Assembly: GCA_937625935.1 (NCBI GenBank)
Contig: OW569384.1
Span: 124,001-188,000, forward strand
Source of the DNA: Tetramitus jugosus
Taxonomy: Eukaryota; Protista; Heterolobosea
Length of the DNA stretch: 64,000 bases
Direction of reading: 5' to 3'
Below the pieces are notes generated by a model that was not told the DNA's origin, searched no databases, and saw only the letters and a program-made list of their open reading frames with translations. Shown piece after piece: positions 34,441 to 41,110 of this stretch. A program made the position numbers and the translations under genes. The number at the start of each line of letters is the position of its first letter. Positions within the stretch are counted from its first letter, which is position 1.

Positions 34441-36009
34441 TTATTCATTCCTCTTTGACACTTTGATTTTATCAAAGACTGGATGAATGGTGATAATTTC
34501 TTTTTCTCCAATCTCCATATTCGGATCATATCCATCAGGGAAGCTGATATTGTAGAATTGAGCTAGTCTCGCGAGAATCATCACAGACTCTACCAAAGAG
34601 AACTGGAATCCAATACATTTTCGAACACCAAATGAGAATGGTAACCAAGTCATTGGCTTAATTTTCTTGGCCAACACAGGATCATGGAATCTTTCAGGGT
34701 TGTATTTCATTGGCTCTGGCCAGTATTCCGGATTTCTATGAGTTGCAATAAAATTGGTGAATACCATGGTGTCCTTTGGAATCTTGAAGTTTCGGATCTT
34801 GACGGTCTTTGTTGTGACTTTCGGAACCATGGAAACAGGAGAATGGAGTCTCATACTTTCTTTGATACAACTCAATGTATAGGACAACTTGTCATAATCT
34901 TCAAAAGTGGGAGGTCTTTTGTTGGGTAATTGAGTATCAATTTCTTGTTGGAGTTTTTGATAAATGTCCGGATGTCTTGCTAGCTCCAACAGAGTCCATT
35001 TTAGTTGTGTAGCTGTTGTTTCATGTCCAGCTGCCAAAAAGATGAACATGTTGCTTCTAATTTGTTCATAACCCATTTTTTGTCTTGTGACGAGATTTCC
35101 TTCCTCATCTACTCCTTCTTCCTTTTCATTTGCAGTTAAGAGTAGTGACATGAGATCTAACTGATGGTCACTAGCAGTGTGATTATCACTTCCTTCCAAT
35201 GATTTCATTTTTTGATCGTAGAGCTCATCAATGTACTTGCCAAAGTCTGCTACCGCTCTGTTCGTTTTGGACCATAGAAACTGCAATGGATCAGGAACTA
35301 AACCCTTAATAAGAATAGCAGAATCGATTGTAATCTCCAAAGCTTCTCTGAATGTAAACTCATGCTTCGTTTTATCAATCTTTGCCCACTCAGATTCCTT
35401 GTTGAATACGCCGAGATCGACATTGAATCCCGCCTTTGAGATAATATCCAGTGTCACATCGACGGTGGCAGTATTTAACGAAACAACAGAAGCAGATTCC
35501 TTGTCCCACTTTGATCTCAATAGATCAGTGCTTCTCACTGATACATCAGCCAAGTATCTCATATGAGAGCTTGAGAAAGCAGGACTACATAGCATGTGAT
35601 GCTTCTTCCAGTCATCATACTTGACAAGAGTTAAAATGTTGTGCCCCAACAATCTCAGCCCCTTGTAGTAATCCACAGTTGACTTGACAAAAGAATCTTG
35701 AGACTTCAAGAGTACTTCCTTCAGATCCTCTGGGCTACTCAAATAGATGTTAATTTGCTTTCCGTTCACTATTCTGAACAAGAGGTTTGATCCTTGATTC
35801 AATTGCTGCTGTGCAACAATACCAGAGTTGCCATGATATCCGTGAGGGGCCAACAAAGGGATCCTGAAAAACGAGAAGGGAAGCAATTGAGATACTCCTG
35901 GGATATTCTTGACCTTTTGCACTTGTTCATAGTGCTTGTACAAGTAATGAACAATGAATGTGACCAAAAGTACCAACGGGGTGTACAAGATATAGGCTAA
36001 GAGCGTCAT
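34441..36009 (-). CDS. Cytochrome P450
   Basis: N-terminal TM, AAGHETT (I-helix), KESMR (ExxR), PERF, FSFGVRKCIG heme motif. Confidence 0.96.
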   Translation of the reverse strand: MTLLAYILYTPLVLLVTFIVHYLYKHYEQVQKVKNIPGVSQLLPFSFFRIPLLAPHGYHGNSGIVAQQQLNQGSNLLFRIVNGKQINIYLSSPEDLKEVLLKSQDSFVKSTVDYYKGLRLLGHNILTLVKYDDWKKHHMLCSPAFSSSHMRYLADVSVRSTDLLRSKWDKESASVVSLNTATVDVTLDIISKAGFNVDLGVFNKESEWAKIDKTKHEFTFREALEITIDSAILIKGLVPDPLQFLWSKTNRAVADFGKYIDELYDQKMKSLEGSDNHTASDHQLDLMSLLLTANEKEEGVDEEGNLVTRQKMGYEQIRSNMFIFLAAGHETTATQLKWTLLELARHPDIYQKLQQEIDTQLPNKRPPTFEDYDKLSYTLSCIKESMRLHSPVSMVPKVTTKTVKIRNFKIPKDTMVFTNFIATHRNPEYWPEPMKYNPERFHDPVLAKKIKPMTWLPFSFGVRKCIGFQFSLVESVMILARLAQFYNISFPDGYDPNMEIGEKEIITIHPVFDKIKVSKRNE

Positions 36010-36622
36010 GATGTTCCAATGTTTTCAAGTGTTTTTTCTTCCGGATGGAAAAAGACACAGGGGGGACACTCAACTTTTTCTGCCGCTCAAAGTATCGGTT
36101 GAAGCTAACCAACACCAAACACAACAGAAAGAGCATCAACAACATCTACAACAACAACAACAAGCTACTGTACCATCATCATCTCCTTCTTCTCCATCGA
36201 CGTCATCTCCAACCTCTACAACTTCTTCCATTCAACAACATGCAGATGATAAAAAGGAACAACAACAACAATGGCGCGATGTCGACGAAATACAAGAAGA
36301 GTTGCAATTCGCCACCACACCAAACAATCTGGCAAGTAAGTTGAATGCCTACTTACTGATGGGTTCAGGCAGCGTAGGTTCCAAGAAGATTTGACTGAAC
36401 AAGTGTTGTTACTGAACTTTAGTTAGAACTTTGATGACTTTCGAAATTTGCTTTTCATACATCACACGATGATATGTGATTAAAGTTTGATCATCTGCAG
36501 TGAAAGTACTTCCAATTGTCTTTACACTAGAGGAGCGATCATAGGATTCTTCCGGTGTCTTACAGTACCACCACTGTCACACTCTAAATCTATCTGAAAT
36601 TAGTTGTATGAAACAAGCCATA

Positions 36623-36913
36623 TCATACCCGGGGAGCGTAGATAATTCTTCGTGGTTGGTAAGTTATTCTCGGTTTGCTCACCACCAAAACATCCTTGAT
36701 TATTTCGCGTCGACAGACGCAACATGTATTGTGATTTTGAAACCAACTTGCAATACACTTCCAGTGAAATGTATGTTGGCATTCAGTGGTGAATATATTG
36801 GTATTGGCGTACGACATGCAAATTGTACATTGATGCTGTCGTTTATTCATCAGATACTTGTTGTGGTGCTTTCGTCGGGAACTCTTGCCTCTACTTCCTC
36901 GCTTCTTCTTCAT
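36623..36913 (-). CDS. Small RING-H2 finger protein (putative E3 ligase) with basic N-terminus
   Basis: CTIC...CQHTFHWKCIASW...TCCVCR, C3H2C3 spacing; intronless, 96 aa. Confidence 0.75.
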   Translation of the reverse strand: MKKKRGSRGKSSRRKHHNKYLMNKRQHQCTICMSYANTNIFTTECQHTFHWKCIASWFQNHNTCCVCRREIIKDVLVVSKPRITYQPRRIIYAPRV

Positions 36914-37090
36914 TTGTTGTTTTATTCTTTTTGATCGCGATCACACATACATATTCTAATTTTACAAACAGACCAGTTGAGTTAACACATCAACAAATAA
37001 AACAAAGTCAGATCGAATGAAATTTAAGGGGAATAGTATTGTCGATGATTTTAAGTTTGTGCGCGGTGTGTTTAACATGCTGCAGCCTTA

Positions 37091-40000
37091 TGAAACAACA
37101 TCGACATACACAATCACCTATTTGGGTCATGAATGATATACACTTACATAGTGAGATTCTACTTATGATAACCACATGAAACTTCAAGCTTAGAACAACA
37201 AGACTTACAACACTTCGAAGAACATGCTTTGGCCCCAATCTTATTACAAGATATACATTTCTGTCTAACATTGGACACGACATCTCTCGACAAACCAATG
37301 ACAGGATTTGTCAAGATACCATGTTCATCAAAATTCCGATGCCATAGATGAGCATCGATTGTTTTCGCCCGCTCAGTTATCAGCTTTCTCACGGTCATTC
37401 CATTACCATCGGCGATATATTGCAGTATCTTCTCCATCGCTATAACATCAGGTTCCACTTTATGTTGATTCTCAATTCGTTGATTGAACAGATATTCATA
37501 TACTGAACCAAGGTCATATTTAGATAGACCTTTTACTCGACACTTGAATATTGGTAGCGTGTCCACAAATATGAGCCTCTTTCTACAAAGACGCTCGTCC
37601 AGGTTTGTTTGATGTCTGGTGTAAACCTCCATCAACACATCTCTATCGAATGTGGCATTATGACAGACAATAGCCGTCACATTCGATTGGTTCAACATAC
37701 GCACAAGCTTTTGAATTGCATTTACCTCCGGTTCTGCCTCTAGTAACATGGTTTCAGTAATCCCCGTTTTCCTAGTTGCCTCATGAGATAATCTAATCCC
37801 AGAGTTAATATACAAAGGAAAGCTCAGGGCTTCCTTTGTATCCAAACAGATACAGTATAGATCTGTTAAACCTCTAGGTGTCTGGAAACCAGTAGTTTCT
37901 GTGTCAAGAAATAATATTTGGCTATCATCCATGACTCTGAGGACATTATATTCCACATGATGAAGTGTGCAACCACCTTGATCCCTACAGCACTTTGCAC
38001 ATCGACTATTTGAGCACTTACTTGCTGAAGCTCGCCTGCATGAACCACTAGCACATATCTTTGACGTTTTGTTGGTTCTTGTGGAAGAACTGGATGTAGT
38101 AGCGGCAGTATTTGTTGAAGGTCTGGAATCTTTCCGAAGAATGACAGAGCCAGCAGAGGTGTCAAACTCAGTATTATCAATTATCTGCGGATGATCTCCA
38201 ATAGATGAAATAGAGAGATGCTCCTCTAGAAGTTGAGATGAATCGATGATGGTAGAATCTGATAACTTAGCCGTTCGTTTCATCTCATTAGTTACTGCAG
38301 TTGCCACGGTTTTGCTGATTGCATGTGCAGTTTGTAAATGATTAGCTAGGCACTTTGGGTACGAATATAACTTCTCGCAACTGCATCCTTCTACCGGACA
38401 AGATAAATAGACAGGGGCTCTACACTTATGTTGTGATCCTATTGTGACGAAGTTCTTGATTGGACGGAATCTATCAAGCAATTGTTGCACGAATGGAGTG
38501 ATAACAGATGATCTTTGTTGTCTTGGAATTGTTTTCTTTCGTTTTAAGTTCGGAGTTTTCAAAACTATATCAATATCACAGTAGTTCTTGCCTAGAGGAC
38601 ATCTTGGAACCGCGAATCCCAGATCAGATTCATCTGCAAATTTGATTTGCATTATCAAGTATGCTTGGGCATGGAGTCTAGCATATTCAGCAACGGAGAA
38701 TACAGGATTCTTAGCTCGCATAATTGAGAAGAAATTTTCTACAACCAGTGTCCCAAGCGAACTGAACCGAAATTGAGTATTTTTCCACTTTTCAACCAGT
38801 TGTATGAGATTGTCAATCGTAATTGTTATATGATGAATTGTAGGGTTGGGGGTTCCTTCAATAGATTTAAAAAATTTAGAGCATATCTCCATCTGTTTTT
38901 TCCGGTCAGTCCAAACGATATTATTACTGTATAAACATTGATAAAGATTCTTCATGTTTTGAATATATGCTCCAATCGCTTTGTATTTAAAATCTGTATG
39001 ACTGGTCAATACTGTTGTATCCATATTGATAAGTGCCTTCACAGGTTCCCATTTGAGTTTGTTCGGATTGAGAACCTTTGGGTCAAGTTTCAATTGAAGC
39101 GTATCTATTGCATCAGCAAGTAATTTGCTGTTAATGGCAACTCTATTCTGGTTCACGACGACGATAATATCATTGTTTAGCAAAGCATTTCGAATATTCT
39201 TAACTATATGTTGGGAGTCGTATATGTGAAATACATCTGGGTAACGCAATTTAAGTGCTTCTTCCACTTCTGCATTTTGTGGATCGCCATCACTGGATGT
39301 CCAAGCGAGAACAAACTTTTTTGTTTCTTCAAGCTTTTGGATTAGAGGGCATAGGTGTTTCATTAGACAATCGGTCAACTTTGTGTTCGCGTTCTTTGCA
39401 AAGAAAGCCAACGGAAAAGTATTGCTTCCGTTTGCAAATGTTATAAATAACTGCAATACCTTATCCCCCAAAAGGCATTCGATGGAAGGCTCATCCATAT
39501 TTCGGAGGTCATCTATGGTGAGAATACTTTCTCCCCCAACAACGAACAGATCTCCACTCTTGTGCATGACTTCAAGACCACTTCTAATATCAGTTTCATC
39601 CCAAGAGATGCCAATTGGTATTGGATCGTTTGTAGTCACCGAATCAATCAAATTTTTGAAATCTGTGTCAGATAGGGGACCATCGTTTCAGTGTTTTGTT
39701 GTGAGGAAACATCATATTACTCCTCCCATTTACTCGTGCAGATGATGTTAATATATCGATAGCTTTCTTTCCTCCATACCATTTTAAATACATGGCTAAT
39801 AGTAAGATAGAGTTGTCGTATCTGTGACCATTGGATGTCTTTTTGTTGAAGTTCCGAAAACATATACGTATCCAATGTGAAAAGAATGAGTTGTTGAAAC
39901 TAGGATTTTGTATTGTAGATGAAAAGTCTTTGATCAATGAAGTAGATTCTTGAAAAGCAATAGTTTGTCCCTGAGATCTTAGCTTGTCGTTGTCTGATTT

Positions 40001-41110
40001 GAGTTTCGAGTTGTGATGTTGATACTGTTTGATGTACTCCCGTAGTAGCTCAGGGGGATCATGAATCTTCACTTTTCGTTGCGTTAGATCGTTCACGAGG
40101 TGATTCTTCAATCTCTTGATGCGGAATCTCAATATGTTATTGAACAACTTTTTACATTCTTGACACATAATATTTTGCTCTGAAAGGCTTTGACATAGTA
40201 TAGAATGAACTCTTCCTATGTCGTTGATATTATGTTGTCGTGCTATAACCATGTTCTTTTTTGAATCTAATATAACACCATTATTTATAATGTATTTTAA
40301 GCTGTCATCAATAATTCCGGGACAATTATGTTGTTTTGGTTTTTTGGAAGATCGATGTTCGGGTGTATCTCGCTTTCTTTTAGCATTTGTTGATAACCAT
40401 TGATTTGTATCTTCTTTAGAAAGTATTGTTCCTCTGTAATGGCTTTTCGTACTTGAAGATTGATAACGATGATATTTTATGACTATTGGTGTATCAGTAG
40501 ATGTGATGTTGTTTGTCAGTCTTTTTATTTCCTCCAAGCAATGCCAACAAATTTTATTGAGTTGGTTTCCGTTGCTTTTGTGTATGTGTACTCCATATGG
40601 GATGTTGTATAGTTTTGTTCCATTATTCACTTTATGTTGAAATACCACGCATTTACTCATACTATTCTTCGTTTGTGTTTGAAATTGTGCTCTGTTCTGA
40701 TTCCAATGAGTGCAAAAATTTGTTGAACATTCACCAGATTGAAGTTCAATAAACACGATGAAGATTCAATTATGGCGTTTGTGTGTATCAGGCCCTTTGA
40801 CACCCGCTGAATTTTCCTGGAACTTCGTTTTTACTGCATGTATTCTGTTATCCCCTATGAAATAAGTGCAAGTACAAGCACAAGAATCGTTGGTGTTCAT
40901 TTTCTCTTCCTTTTCACTTGTTCGGTTCCCACTCTCCAATGTGCGCGAAATAAGAGATTTAGTCGCCGAAACTGGTTGGAGTGTCCCCCCTATGGAAAAA
41001 GAGGAAGTTCTACTTCCCAAGAAATACCCCTTCGTACTACGACTGTCAGTCCGCGTGCACGAAAAGCGTGACACGGACTTCCGATTACACCGATTTTCGA
41101 TGTTGCTTCA
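37091..41110 (-). mobile_element. P-superfamily DNA transposon (ends uncertain; may extend to include the RING gene)
   Basis: Encodes a P-type transposase; more AT-rich than flanking genes. The only inverted-repeat candidate found is a 13/14 match (37091-37104 vs 41097-41110). No TSD seen. Confidence 0.6.
37159..40660 (-). CDS. P-element-like DDE transposase fused to C2H2 finger, DEDDh exonuclease and two SRS-type zinc fingers; one +1 frameshift near 39670
   Basis: ORF1: GHRYDNSILLLAMYLKWYGGKKAIDIL...FPHNKTLKRW. ORF2: ISWDE, TFPLAFF, SSDG, DSQHIVKNIRN, VVENFFS (P-type D-D-DxxH-E), then CPVEGC...HLQTAH, FLDTETTG/HNATFD/HKVEPD. Start at ATG 40660 is inferred. Confidence 0.85.

What the first reader, a model, noticed from the sequence alone, without database searches (positions are those of the whole stretch)
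37159..40660. P-element-type transposase fused to a DEDDh 3'-5' exonuclease and multiple zinc fingers
Seen: a P-superfamily core (RY...L...K A...L...FP..TL.RW; WDE; SDG; DSQHIVKNIRN; VENFFS) followed in the same frame by a C2H2 finger (~38325-38400), a Cys-rich finger, a DnaQ/TREX-like nuclease with all catalytic residues (DTE, FD, H....D; ~37420-37920) and a second Cys-rich finger. Knowledge: Drosophila P transposase uses a GTP-binding insertion and makes staggered cuts leaving 17-nt 3' overhangs. Exonuclease fusions are reported for some other DNA-transposon groups (e.g. Dada), but I do not know a P + DEDDh + paired SRS-finger architecture. Inference: a new P lineage that carries its own end-trimming nuclease, to process donor or transposon 3' overhangs or to degrade silencing nucleic acids. 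This is the best candidate for an undescribed system here.
Basis: partly seen in the sequence, partly recalled or inferred. Interest (0 to 1): 0.85.

Follow-up and report, generated by a model that had tools for sequence, protein, structure and literature searches.

The report
P-type transposon with built-in exonuclease
This is a 4.9-kb cut-and-paste transposon of the P-element kind in an amoeba-like protist; its transposase is fused to a TREX-like DNA-trimming exonuclease, an arrangement shared by a large protist branch of P elements for which I found no publication, although this particular copy is broken by a frameshift.

Summary
The minus-strand gene encodes a P-type transposase core, a C2H2 finger, a Cys-rich finger, an intact DEDDh exonuclease and a second Cys-rich finger.

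- **Core:** a family profile hits the Drosophila P transposase (E 3.5e-10). The model (pLDDT 91) matches 6p5a with Z 27; the next fold scores 13.
- **Exonuclease:** it passes Pfam RNase_T and is closest to TREX1 (Z 18.9).
- **Element ends:** They are 16-bp inverted repeats, CAYAGGGGGGACACTC, at 36056-36071 and 40979-40994, flanked by a perfect 8-bp duplication (GAAAAAGA). The repeat core occurs only at these two places in the 26-Mb genome.
- **Second gene:** the 4,939-bp element also carries a small RING-H2 gene.
- **Recent insertion:** contigs from public runs appear to read straight across an empty site.
- **This copy is broken:** a frame shift at about 39670-39690 is reproduced in three runs.
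- **The fusion is not a chimera:** 27 of 29 homologues complete enough to judge carry the exonuclease. A soil relative shows 99.9%-identical copies in at least six contexts.
- **Not KolobokD:** it has no TTAA duplication and no zinc fingers in the core.

The exonuclease's role is inferred only. This scan had already reported sister families in the same genome (s1-547765).

The parts
36048..36055 (.). Target-site duplication, left copy (GAAAAAGA)
   Evidence: Identical 8-mer on the outer side of both inverted repeats.
36056..36071 (+). 3' terminal inverted repeat, CACAGGGGGGACACTC
   Evidence: Pattern search gave 2 hits in the window against 0.18 expected. The 14-nt core occurs only at these two sites in the 26.35-Mb genome. 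The same repeat ends the homologous elements L009 and L008.
36623..36913 (-). ORF2: 96-aa RING-H2 protein inside the element
   Evidence: Pfam zf-RING_2, 39.4 bits against a cut-off of 27.3. It lies between the transposase stop codon and the 3' inverted repeat. L009 carries a chromodomain ORF in the same slot.
36932..36943 (.). Palindrome TGATCGCGATCA just upstream of the ORF2 start codon
   Evidence: The block is conserved with L009, where it also lies just upstream of ORF2 (blastn hit; alignment; position). A promoter or operator role is inferred.
37159..39651 (-). ORF-C (830 aa): P-type RNase H core with insertion domain, C2H2 finger, Cys finger 1, DEDDh exonuclease, Cys finger 2
38725..39603 (-). 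DDE catalytic core from the first D (WDE) to E (VENFFS), including the insertion domain that aligns with the P-element GTP-binding domain
   Evidence: Profile alignment to 6p5a residues 282-540. VIA-align Z 27.1 to 6p5a residues 212-569. D121, D145 and H148 are invariant and E305 nearly invariant in the 49-sequence alignment.
38323..38400 (-). C2H2 zinc finger
   Evidence: Sequence CPVEGC...HLQTAH. The family profile hits the YY1 fingers at E 0.003. The model shows a beta-beta-alpha element at residues 415-443.
37957..38055 (-). Cys-rich finger 1 (C-x4-C-x7-C-x4-C-x2-CC-x5-C-x2-H)
   Evidence: Conserved in P0001, P0002, P0008 and P0035. No Pfam match.
37447..37911 (-). DEDDh 3'-5' exonuclease domain (TREX-like)
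   Evidence: PF00929 at 33.8 bits. DxE, NxxFD and Hx4D are present, and conserved in nearly all family members shown (P0008 has TE for FD). Foldseek hits TREX1/2 at E 2e-9. VIA-align gives Z 18.9 to TREX1.
37165..37257 (-). Cys-rich finger 2
   Evidence: Sequence. Present only in the window, P0001 and P0002.
39668..39690 (-). Frame break between ORF-N and ORF-C
   Evidence: ORF-N stops at TGA 39668-39670; the ORF-C frame opens at 39687. About 20 nt are missing here relative to L008 and L009, which both have 10 codons between RWSP and (D/Q)FK. Contigs of three runs cover the site without a difference (table 8).
39671..40660 (-). ORF-N (330 aa from the ATG): CHCC zinc finger, second Cys cluster, basic and coiled-coil stretch, then the 'RYDNS...FPHNKTLKRW' block that precedes the core
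   Evidence: Alignment with P0001 and L009. Atlas features are nearest to THAP/Tnp_P_element clusters at 0.86, a lead only.
40979..40994 (-). 5' terminal inverted repeat, CATAGGGGGGACACTC
   Evidence: The conserved block lies about 320-370 bp upstream of the ATG in the window, L009 and L008.
40995..41002 (.). Target-site duplication, right copy (GAAAAAGA)

Best explanation
Window 36056-40994 is one insertion of a cut-and-paste DNA transposon of the P superfamily.

Shown:
- It has 16-bp terminal inverted repeats (CAYAGGGGGGACACTC) and an 8-bp target-site duplication.
- One long gene has this domain order: zinc finger(s), coiled coil, P-type split RNase H core with an insertion domain homologous to the P-element GTP-binding domain, C2H2 finger, Cys finger, TREX-like DEDDh 3'-5' exonuclease, Cys finger.
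- A small downstream RING-H2 gene also lies inside the element.
- The element belongs to a deep clade of P-like transposases, mostly from protists and soil metagenomes, in which the exonuclease fusion is near-universal. Relatives have moved recently.

Inferred:
- The N-terminal fingers and coiled coil bind the repeats and dimerise. The DDE core then excises the element and joins its 3' OH ends into a target with an 8-bp stagger, as in P elements.
- The tethered exonuclease acts on the 3' single-stranded tails that staggered P-type cleavage leaves. The most likely substrate is the broken donor site or mis-cut ends, so that the breaks become repairable or the ends become uniform.

This copy:
- It inserted recently. 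The duplication is perfect, the repeats differ at one base, and an allele without the element appears to exist.
- A frame shift now separates the DNA-binding part (330 aa) from the catalytic part. It is therefore probably unable to move by itself and may at most make a truncated, DNA-binding-only protein.
For: P core:
- Profile against 6p5a, E 3.5e-10, with the second D, D-x2-H and E motifs aligned.
- 26 of 49 family members hit PF21787.
- Model pLDDT 91. Foldseek E 5e-14. VIA-align Z 27.1 against 13.3 for the next fold.

Exonuclease:
- PF00929 above its cut-off.
- Catalytic residues conserved across the family.
- TREX1/2 are the top structural matches.

Ends:
- Inverted-repeat pair, unique in the genome, with a perfect 8-bp duplication.
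- L009 has the same repeats and its own perfect duplication, GAAAATTT.

Mobility:
- Loose ends 'before 40992' in X1, X3 and X4 read the left-flank sequence ...GTGTTTTTTCTT(C/A)CGG. This is an empty site (table 7, compared).
- Homologues sit in unrelated flanks.

Recurrence of the fusion:
- P0019, P0021, P0024 and P0166 carry PF21787 plus PF00929.
- 41 retrieved proteins match both my core and my exonuclease profiles.
- In the tree, 27 members carry the exonuclease, 2 clearly lack it, and 32 are too truncated to tell. The fusion is spread over all branches.

Active relatives:
- P0156/P0155 elements: 99.9%-identical copies with at least six different left flanks, inverted repeats and the 8-bp duplication GCAGTTTT.
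- A second family in this genome, on contig 36: intact 1522-aa gene, repeat CAGGGGGGGGTCA, duplication GCAATTTG, plus broken copies.

Frame break reproduced in three runs.
Against: - Pfam does not recognise the P core in this sequence itself.
- The N-terminal finger is not recognised as THAP by Pfam or by a profile search of solved structures.
- There is no biochemical evidence for any role of the exonuclease. A 3'-5' exonuclease could in principle destroy the reactive 3' OH ends of the transposon, so its substrate must be restricted in some unknown way.
- The structural match to TREX1 is only 1-3 Z units above DNA polymerase III epsilon, RNase T and the ERI1-type 3'hExo. DNA versus RNA specificity is therefore open.
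- No RNA run was found, so expression is unknown.
- The empty-site reading rests on 30-nt loose-end consensus strings, not on full contigs.
Confidence: 0.78

Rival explanations
1. The exonuclease is not part of the DNA chemistry of transposition. It protects the element instead: it degrades small silencing RNAs (ERI-1-like), or excised or abortive DNA that would trigger a host response (TREX1-like).
For: The DEDDh fold is shared with ERI1/3'hExo (Z 15.9), ERI2 (14.7), SDN1 and the QIP exonuclease of the quelling pathway. TREX1 itself clears stray DNA. The element also carries chromatin- or ubiquitin-related ORF2 cassettes (RING-H2 here, a chromodomain in L009), which suggests interplay with host silencing.
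Against: The best matches are DNA exonucleases: TREX1/2, the DinG exonuclease domain, polymerase III epsilon and ExoX. The domain is covalently tethered to a DNA-bound transposase, flanked by DNA-binding-type fingers, and kept in nearly every member of the clade. This fits an in-cis role. Analogous fusions in Dada and KolobokD were also read as end processing (PMC3706591, PMC9587614).
Confidence: 0.15
2. The locus is a domesticated, immobile host gene derived from a P-like transposase, as THAP9 is, rather than a transposon.
For: There is a single full copy in the genome. The ORFs are long and otherwise open. A paralogue on contig 36 has host-like SAP domains and a basic tail.
Against: Intact inverted repeats and a perfect 8-bp duplication. 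Empty-site contigs. A frame-breaking deficit of about 20 nt. Homologues in L008, L009 and L010 share no flanking genes with the window. L009 has its own duplication.
Confidence: 0.03
3. It is a member of KolobokD, the published Kolobok lineage with a DEDDh exonuclease, and not of P.
For: Kolobok and P are related and share the C/DxxH signature. KolobokD encodes a TREX- or exuperantia-like DEDDh nuclease (PMC9587614).
Against: The duplication is 8 bp and not TTAA. Neither of the two zinc fingers that define the KolobokD core is present: the window has no CCHC after the first D and no finger between DxxH and E (sequence; criteria). The last motif is the P-type VENFFSxxR, not the Kolobok AESMNH type. 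The match to the P transposase has Z 27.
Confidence: 0.03
4. The frame break is a programmed +1 ribosomal frameshift at ATC-TGA-C. It would set the ratio of a short DNA-binding repressor to full-length transposase.
For: The stop is a UGA-C, a weak termination context. The zero-frame product would be a DNA-binding and dimerisation fragment, like the truncated repressors of P elements (PMC7776569).
Against: The closest intact homologue, P0001, is one uninterrupted 1161-aa ORF. L009 is broken at a different place. The break coincides with about 20 nt that both relatives have and the window lacks, which is what an ordinary inactivating deletion looks like.
Confidence: 0.04

Closest known systems
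Drosophila P element transposase / vertebrate THAP9 (P superfamily)
   Same: Split RNase H DDE core with a large, mostly helical insertion domain (Z 27.1 to 6p5a). D-x2-H signature and the E motif (V/L)E(N/H)FF. 8-bp target duplication. Short inverted repeats that begin with CA. The N-terminal order is zinc finger, coiled coil, then the region preceding the core.
   Different: Only about 14-16% identity. Pfam's P-specific models (PF12017, PF21788, PF21789, PF12596) do not match. The N-terminal finger is CHCC and is not recognised as THAP. After the core come a C2H2 finger, Cys-rich fingers and a DEDDh exonuclease that P and THAP9 lack. The repeats are 16 bp, not 31 bp. GTP dependence and the 17-nt stagger are untested.
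KolobokD (Kojima & Bao 2022, PMC9587614)
   Same: A DDE transposon of the C/DxxH group that encodes a TREX- or exuperantia-like DEDDh exonuclease. The authors propose that it degrades DNA intermediates from the 3' end.
   Different: Different superfamily: TTAA duplications, two zinc fingers inside the core, and a different E motif. It is reported from molluscs, arthropods and cnidarians. This looks like an independent acquisition.
Dada transposons of Laccaria and Ectocarpus (Kojima & Jurka 2013, PMC3706591)
   Same: A DDE transposase carrying a DnaQ-like 3'-5' exonuclease that is proposed to process cleaved 3' ends.
   Different: The Dada domain is DEDDy-type and sits inside the core, between the second D and DxxH. 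Here it is DEDDh-type and sits C-terminal to the core. Dada targets small-RNA genes.
TREX1/TREX2 and other DEDDh exonucleases (Pol III epsilon, ExoX, RNase T, ERI1)
   Same: Fold (Z 18.9 to TREX1, 23-24% identity over about 186 residues) and all five catalytic residues.
   Different: Here the domain is part of a transposase of about 1160 aa and is bracketed by Cys-rich fingers. The TREX-specific dimer and polyproline features were not examined.
Cas1:Cas2-DEDDh 'trimmer-integrase' (PMC10284694; 8fyc)
   Same: A DEDDh exonuclease fused to an integrase complex, which trims 3' overhangs of the DNA to be integrated. Structural match Z 14.2. This is an analogy of mechanism.
   Different: Prokaryotic and unrelated to DDE transposases. 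There is no evidence that the P-type fusion trims the ends that are integrated.

Membership tests
P superfamily of DDE transposons | RNase H-like DDE core homologous to the P transposase, interrupted by a large insertion domain | tested here: met
   Profile against 6p5a, E 3.5e-10. Foldseek E 5e-14. VIA-align Z 27.1, rmsd 3.0, 306 residues, covering P residues 212-569.
P superfamily of DDE transposons | D-x2-H signature after the second D, and the (V/L)E-x-FF-x3-R motif at the catalytic E | tested here: met
   D145 and H148 invariant, E305/F308/S309 nearly invariant. They align with SDTPH and VEHFFGSMR of the P transposase.
P superfamily of DDE transposons | 7-8-bp target-site duplication and terminal inverted repeats | tested here: met
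   GAAAAAGA on both sides of 16-bp repeats. Relatives have GAAAATTT (L009), GCAGTTTT (P0156 family) and GCAATTTG (contig 36 family).
P superfamily of DDE transposons | N-terminal THAP zinc finger (C2CH) | tested here: inconclusive
   No Pfam THAP hit at E<=10 and no hit to solved structures with a profile. The conserved ligands are C4, H9, C38 and C41, with an L(Y/F)xIP motif. Language-model features are nearest to THAP/Tnp_P_element clusters at 0.86, which is only a lead.
P superfamily of DDE transposons | GTP as cofactor; 17-nt staggered donor cleavage | not testable with these tools
   The insertion domain aligns with the P GTP-binding domain. Nucleotide binding and cleavage geometry need biochemistry (features taken from PMC7776569).
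Kolobok / KolobokD | TTAA-specific 4-bp target duplication | tested here: not met
   The duplications are 8 bp and of varied sequence. Criterion from PMC9587614.
Kolobok / KolobokD | CCHC finger after the first D, and a zinc finger between C/DxxH and the catalytic E | tested here: not met
   There are no conserved Cys or His clusters in those intervals of the 49-sequence alignment. The window has two isolated Cys between DxxH and E, and three scattered Cys (one His) between the first and second D.
DEDDh (DnaQ/RNase T/TREX) exonucleases | Exo I DxE, Exo II NxxFD, Exo III Hx4D; alpha/beta RNase H-like fold; Pfam PF00929 above threshold | tested here: met
SHI/STY (SRS, LRP1) zinc finger | Match to the family model (Pfam DUF702/PF05142) | tested here: not met
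   No hit for either finger at E<=10. Only the Cys spacing, C-x2/4-C-x7-C-x4-C-x2-CC-x5/6-C-x2-H, resembles it.
Dada exonuclease-bearing lineage | DEDDy domain inserted between the second D and DxxH | tested here: not met
   Here only 23 residues separate the second D (121) from DxxH (145). The exonuclease is DEDDh and lies about 275 residues after the catalytic E. Criterion from PMC3706591.

The most novel reading that the evidence does not exclude
The exonuclease is an obligatory catalytic partner, making this a 'trimmer-transposase'. The DDE core would make a loose or long-staggered cut, and the tethered TREX-like domain would then chew the 3' strand back to a boundary set by the bound G-rich repeat, or clean the donor break. 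The clade would thus transpose by a two-nuclease mechanism not known for any eukaryotic DDE transposon. The swappable ORF2 cassette (RING-H2 here, a chromodomain in L009) with its conserved palindromic control element would add a second layer, steering the element towards or away from particular chromatin.
Probability: 0.22. Interest if true: 0.75.

Novelty: new variant of a known kind. Interest (0 to 1): 0.55.

Why it matters
P elements are the textbook eukaryotic transposon, yet outside animals their diversity is poorly charted. This work documents a deep clade found in protists and in soil and peat metagenomes. It includes a Naegleria gruberi protein and an expressed Protostelium nocturnum transcript. 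Nearly every member of the clade keeps a catalytically intact 3'-5' exonuclease welded to the transposase, and some members have moved recently.

Together with Dada (DEDDy) and KolobokD (DEDDh), this makes a third exonuclease acquisition in the C/DxxH group of transposases. By position in the protein and by superfamily it appears independent of the other two. That points to a common unsolved problem in their chemistry: what happens to the 3' tails after staggered cleavage. Intact, very recently mobile relatives exist (the P0156 family and the contig 36 element), so the question can be tested directly with wild-type and exonuclease-dead proteins.

The RING-H2 or chromodomain second gene suggests a link to host chromatin that has not been described for P elements.

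Tried and rejected
- **Pfam and phmmer on the window protein alone.** They gave no P-element hit and only weak exonuclease hits in solved structures. A family profile and a fold model were needed.
I rejected it as the element's ends. It has no flanking duplication and it lies inside or beside the real ends found at 36056/40994.
- **Assembly error as the cause of the frame break.** Rejected: contigs of X1, X3 and X7 cover 39507-40431 without a difference.
- **A short intron at the break.** Rejected: the only GT..AG there is 18 nt long, which keeps the frame and so does not join the two ORFs.
- **Synteny of L008, L009 and L010 with the window.** None beyond the gene itself.
- **THAP identity of the N-terminus.** No support from Pfam or from a profile search of solved structures.
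- **SRS/SHI identity of the Cys fingers.** No Pfam support.
- **A host source for the RING-H2 gene.** The best host paralogues are only 30-45% identical. One fragment on contig 20 is 57% identical at protein level and 99% over 74 nt.
- **The loose-end 30-mer at 39181.** No match in the window, so the second, rearranged form seen in the reads remains unexplained.
- **Literature.** Six full-text searches found no paper on a P-type transposase fused to a DEDDh exonuclease. Repbase and Dfam themselves could not be searched.
- **Not attempted.** The joined (frame-corrected) protein was not searched or folded; the two ORFs were handled apart.


Full report
**1. What is in the sequence**

The window is part of a 26.35-Mb, 56-contig eukaryotic genome. 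An earlier follow-up in this scan calls the organism an amoeba.

On the minus strand two long ORFs abut:
- 39668..40756. The likely start is the ATG at 40660, which gives 330 aa.
- 37159..39651, 830 aa.

The first ORF ends ...FPHNKTLKRWSPI*. The second frame opens 17 nt before that stop and reads ...LSDTDFKNLIDSVTTNDPIPIGISWDETD.

**2. The domains**

*Exonuclease.*
- Pfam recognises only the exonuclease in this sequence: PF00929 RNase_T, 33.8 bits against a cut-off of 24.
- The region modelled at pLDDT 86, and 97-98 within the nuclease.
- It is closest to TREX1/TREX2: Foldseek E 2e-9, TM 0.63-0.71.
- An exhaustive comparison with representative chains gives Z 18.9 to TREX1. Next come the DinG exonuclease domain (18.0), polymerase III epsilon (17.3), exuperantia (16.7), ExoX (16.1), RNase T (16.0) and 3'hExo (15.9).
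- The fold and the DEDDh residues are therefore certain. DNA versus RNA preference is not.
- DxE, NxxFD and Hx4D are conserved across relatives only 14-30% identical.

*Transposase core.*
- An exhaustive search gave 339 homologues.
- Ten were scanned with Pfam. Five carry PF21787, the P/THAP9 RNase H N-terminal domain, above its cut-off. Three of those also carry PF00929.
- A profile of 49 core regions hits the Drosophila P transposase (6p5a) at E 3.5e-10. It aligns the second catalytic D, the D-x2-H signature, the whole insertion domain and the catalytic E motif.
- The AlphaFold model of the window's own core (pLDDT 91, pTM 0.87) finds 6p5a/6pe2 far ahead of everything else. Foldseek gives E 5e-14 against 3e-4 for the next hit. 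VIA-align gives Z 27.1, rmsd 3.0 over 306 residues, against Z 13.3 for Transib.

*Fingers.*
- The C2H2 finger is real.
- The two Cys-rich fingers have the spacing of SHI/STY fingers but match no Pfam model.
- Finger 1 occurs in several subfamilies. Finger 2 occurs only in the closest clade.

*N-terminal half.*
- It has a conserved C-H-C-C finger with an L(Y/F)xIP motif, a second Cys cluster, and a basic and coiled-coil stretch.
- This parallels the order THAP, leucine zipper, HTH of the P transposase (PMC7776569).
- THAP identity is not demonstrated.

**3.

The closest homologues are:
- P0001: 1161 aa, uninterrupted, 57% identical.
- P0002: 776 aa.

They sit on contigs L008 and L009, which share nothing with the window except the gene.

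How the ends were found:
- Aligning the three upstream regions exposed a conserved block, TTCAYAGGGGGGACACTC, about 320-370 bp before the ATG.
- In L009 and L008 the same block recurs, inverted, downstream of the gene.
- Searching the window for it gave exactly two sites: 40979-40994 (minus strand) and 36056-36071 (plus strand, one mismatch), against 0.18 expected by chance.
- The 14-nt core occurs only at these two sites in the whole genome.
- Both sites are flanked on the outside by the same 8-mer, GAAAAAGA.
- L009 has its own perfect 8-bp duplication, GAAAATTT. In L008 the duplication is unclear.

The element therefore spans 36056-40994, which is 4,939 bp. It sits about 40-46 bp upstream of the start codon of a cytochrome P450 gene.

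The earlier candidate ends, a 14-bp repeat at 37091/41097, have no duplication and are rejected.

**4. A second gene**

- Between the transposase stop and the 3' repeat lies a 96-aa RING-H2 ORF on the same strand: zf-RING_2, 39.4 bits against a cut-off of 27.3.
- In L009 the same slot holds a 93-aa chromodomain ORF: Chromo, 52.7 bits.
- Both ORFs are preceded by a conserved block containing the palindrome TGATCGCGATCA.
- This looks like a cassette position with its own control element. That reading is inference.

**5. State of this copy**

- Relative to both homologues, about 20 nt are missing between the codons for RWSP and (D/Q)FK. This shifts the frame.
- Contigs built from three public runs of the same organism cover the site with no difference (table 8: X1 39082-40431, X3 39642-39935, X7 39507-39763). 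The break is therefore not an assembly slip.
- L009 is broken at a different place. L008 is intact.
- This scatter of lesions is what decaying transposon copies look like. It argues against a programmed frameshift.

The same runs hold contigs whose unaligned part, just left of 40992, reads ...GTGTTTTTTCTT(C/A)CGG (table 7). That is the window's left flank at 36029-36044. These contigs therefore appear to run from the left flank, through one copy of ATGGAAAAAGA, into the right flank. That is an empty site. It is seen in the organism's own runs and in a groundwater metagenome.

The genome assembly holds no second copy of the flank, so this looks like allelic presence or absence. The basis is 30-nt consensus strings, so I rate it likely rather than proven.

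The reads also show a second, rearranged form of the element that I could not resolve. It has a 1-nt deletion at 38869 and foreign sequence between 39181 and 40372.

**6. The fusion is the rule in a large clade**

- With profiles built here, 41 retrieved proteins match both the core and the exonuclease.
- Among cores long enough to place in a tree, 27 carry the exonuclease (this count includes the window and its contig 36 paralogue). Two with at least 200 residues after the core lack it. The other 32 are truncated by short contigs.
- Exonuclease-bearing members occur on every major branch (quick tree, SH-aLRT support only).
- Members include a Protostelium nocturnum transcript (P0024/P0166) and a Naegleria gruberi predicted protein (P0025, XP_002672253). 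For P0025, my profile finds an exonuclease that Pfam misses.

One relative from soil and peat metagenomes (P0156/P0155) is present as 99.9%-identical copies:
- It has a sharp common left end and at least six different left flanks.
- It has imperfect inverted repeats, TACGGGGTGCTGACT... / ...AGTCAGACACCCGTA.
- The left flank of one contig and the right flank of another share the 8-bp duplication GCAGTTTT.

The window's own genome holds a second family:
- The contig 36 copy is an intact 1522-aa gene with added CXC-like and SAP modules.
- There is a 51%-identical intact copy on contig 14, and broken copies on contigs 18, 19, 26, 38 and 43.
- Its repeat is CAGGGGGGGGTCA and its duplication is GCAATTTG.

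This scan had already reported that family and reached the same reading (s1-547765). Other notes list variants with a PHD finger, which I did not examine.

**7. Comparison with what is known**

- *Dada.* Some Dada transposons carry a DEDDy exonuclease inside the core (PMC3706591).
- *KolobokD.* This lineage encodes a TREX- or exuperantia-like DEDDh exonuclease (PMC9587614).
- *Why the present clade is not KolobokD.* Its duplication is 8 bp and not TTAA. It lacks both core zinc fingers. It has the P-type E motif.
- *Literature.* Six full-text searches found no report of a P-type transposase with a DEDDh exonuclease. Repbase and Dfam could not be queried, so 'undescribed' is provisional.

**8. 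How it most likely works**

Shown: the architecture, the ends, the 8-bp duplication, and the recent mobility of relatives.

Inferred:
- The element moves by P-type cut-and-paste.
- P transposase makes a 17-nt staggered cut that leaves long 3' tails on both the element and the donor (PMC7776569).
- A tethered 3'-5' exonuclease most plausibly trims such tails at the donor break or on mis-cut ends.
- A role against silencing RNAs or stray DNA cannot be excluded.
- As it stands, the window copy can at most make a 330-aa DNA-binding fragment. It probably depends on another source of transposase, and none is present in this assembly.

**9. Verdict**

The lineage and the architecture hold. The function is untested. 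The SRS label is unsupported. This copy is broken.
- It is a new variant of a known kind, of moderate-to-good interest.

Noticed in passing
L014:951-5519 (G000 contig 36, 175950-180518); also contigs 14, 18, 19, 26, 38, 43: A second P-exonuclease family in the same genome. The contig 36 copy is an intact 1522-aa gene with CXC-like and SAP modules, repeat CAGGGGGGGGTCA and duplication GCAATTTG. Its 5' end seems to lack the terminal CA. Contig 14 has a 51%-identical intact copy, and there are several broken copies.
   Followed up: partly
L015-L025 (soil and peat metagenome contigs): A very recently active relative, 1144 or 1201 aa. Copies are 99.9% identical, with at least six different left flanks, inverted repeats and an 8-bp duplication. 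In L015 a Ty3/Gypsy-type retrotransposon is inserted right after its 3' region. A variable poly-A/GA tract near the 3' end breaks the assemblies.
   Followed up: partly
L009:4214-4495: The sister element carries a 93-aa chromodomain ORF where the window's element carries the RING-H2 ORF. Both are preceded by the palindrome TGATCGCGATCA.
   Followed up: partly
L008:4504-5826: In the intact homologue, the 1.3 kb between the transposase stop and the 3' repeat holds opposite-strand ORFs. One of them has a PSME4-type HEAT hit. This may be a captured fragment of a host gene. The duplication of this element is unclear (GTTATTCG/GTTATTCC, displaced by 7 nt).
   Followed up: no
window 38869, 39181, 40372 (reads of X1, X3, X4): A second form of the element exists in the organism's runs and in a groundwater metagenome. 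It has a 1-nt deletion at 38869 and foreign sequence replacing 39182-40371. It is absent from the assembly, and its location is unknown.
   Followed up: partly
G000 contig 20, 133978-134239 and 136561-136634 (L033): Two short relics of the element's 3' part. One is 93% identical to window 36935-37187. The other is 99% identical to 74 nt of the RING-H2 ORF. They lie 2.3 kb apart.
   Followed up: partly
window 34441-36009 (minus strand): A cytochrome P450 gene has its start codon only about 40-46 bp from the insertion. The element has cut it off from its upstream region, and the empty allele would keep that region intact.
   Followed up: no
window 36008-36394 (plus strand): A Q/S/T-rich 128-aa ORF runs from outside the element, through the 3' inverted repeat, into the element. 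It is probably spurious low-complexity sequence.
   Followed up: no
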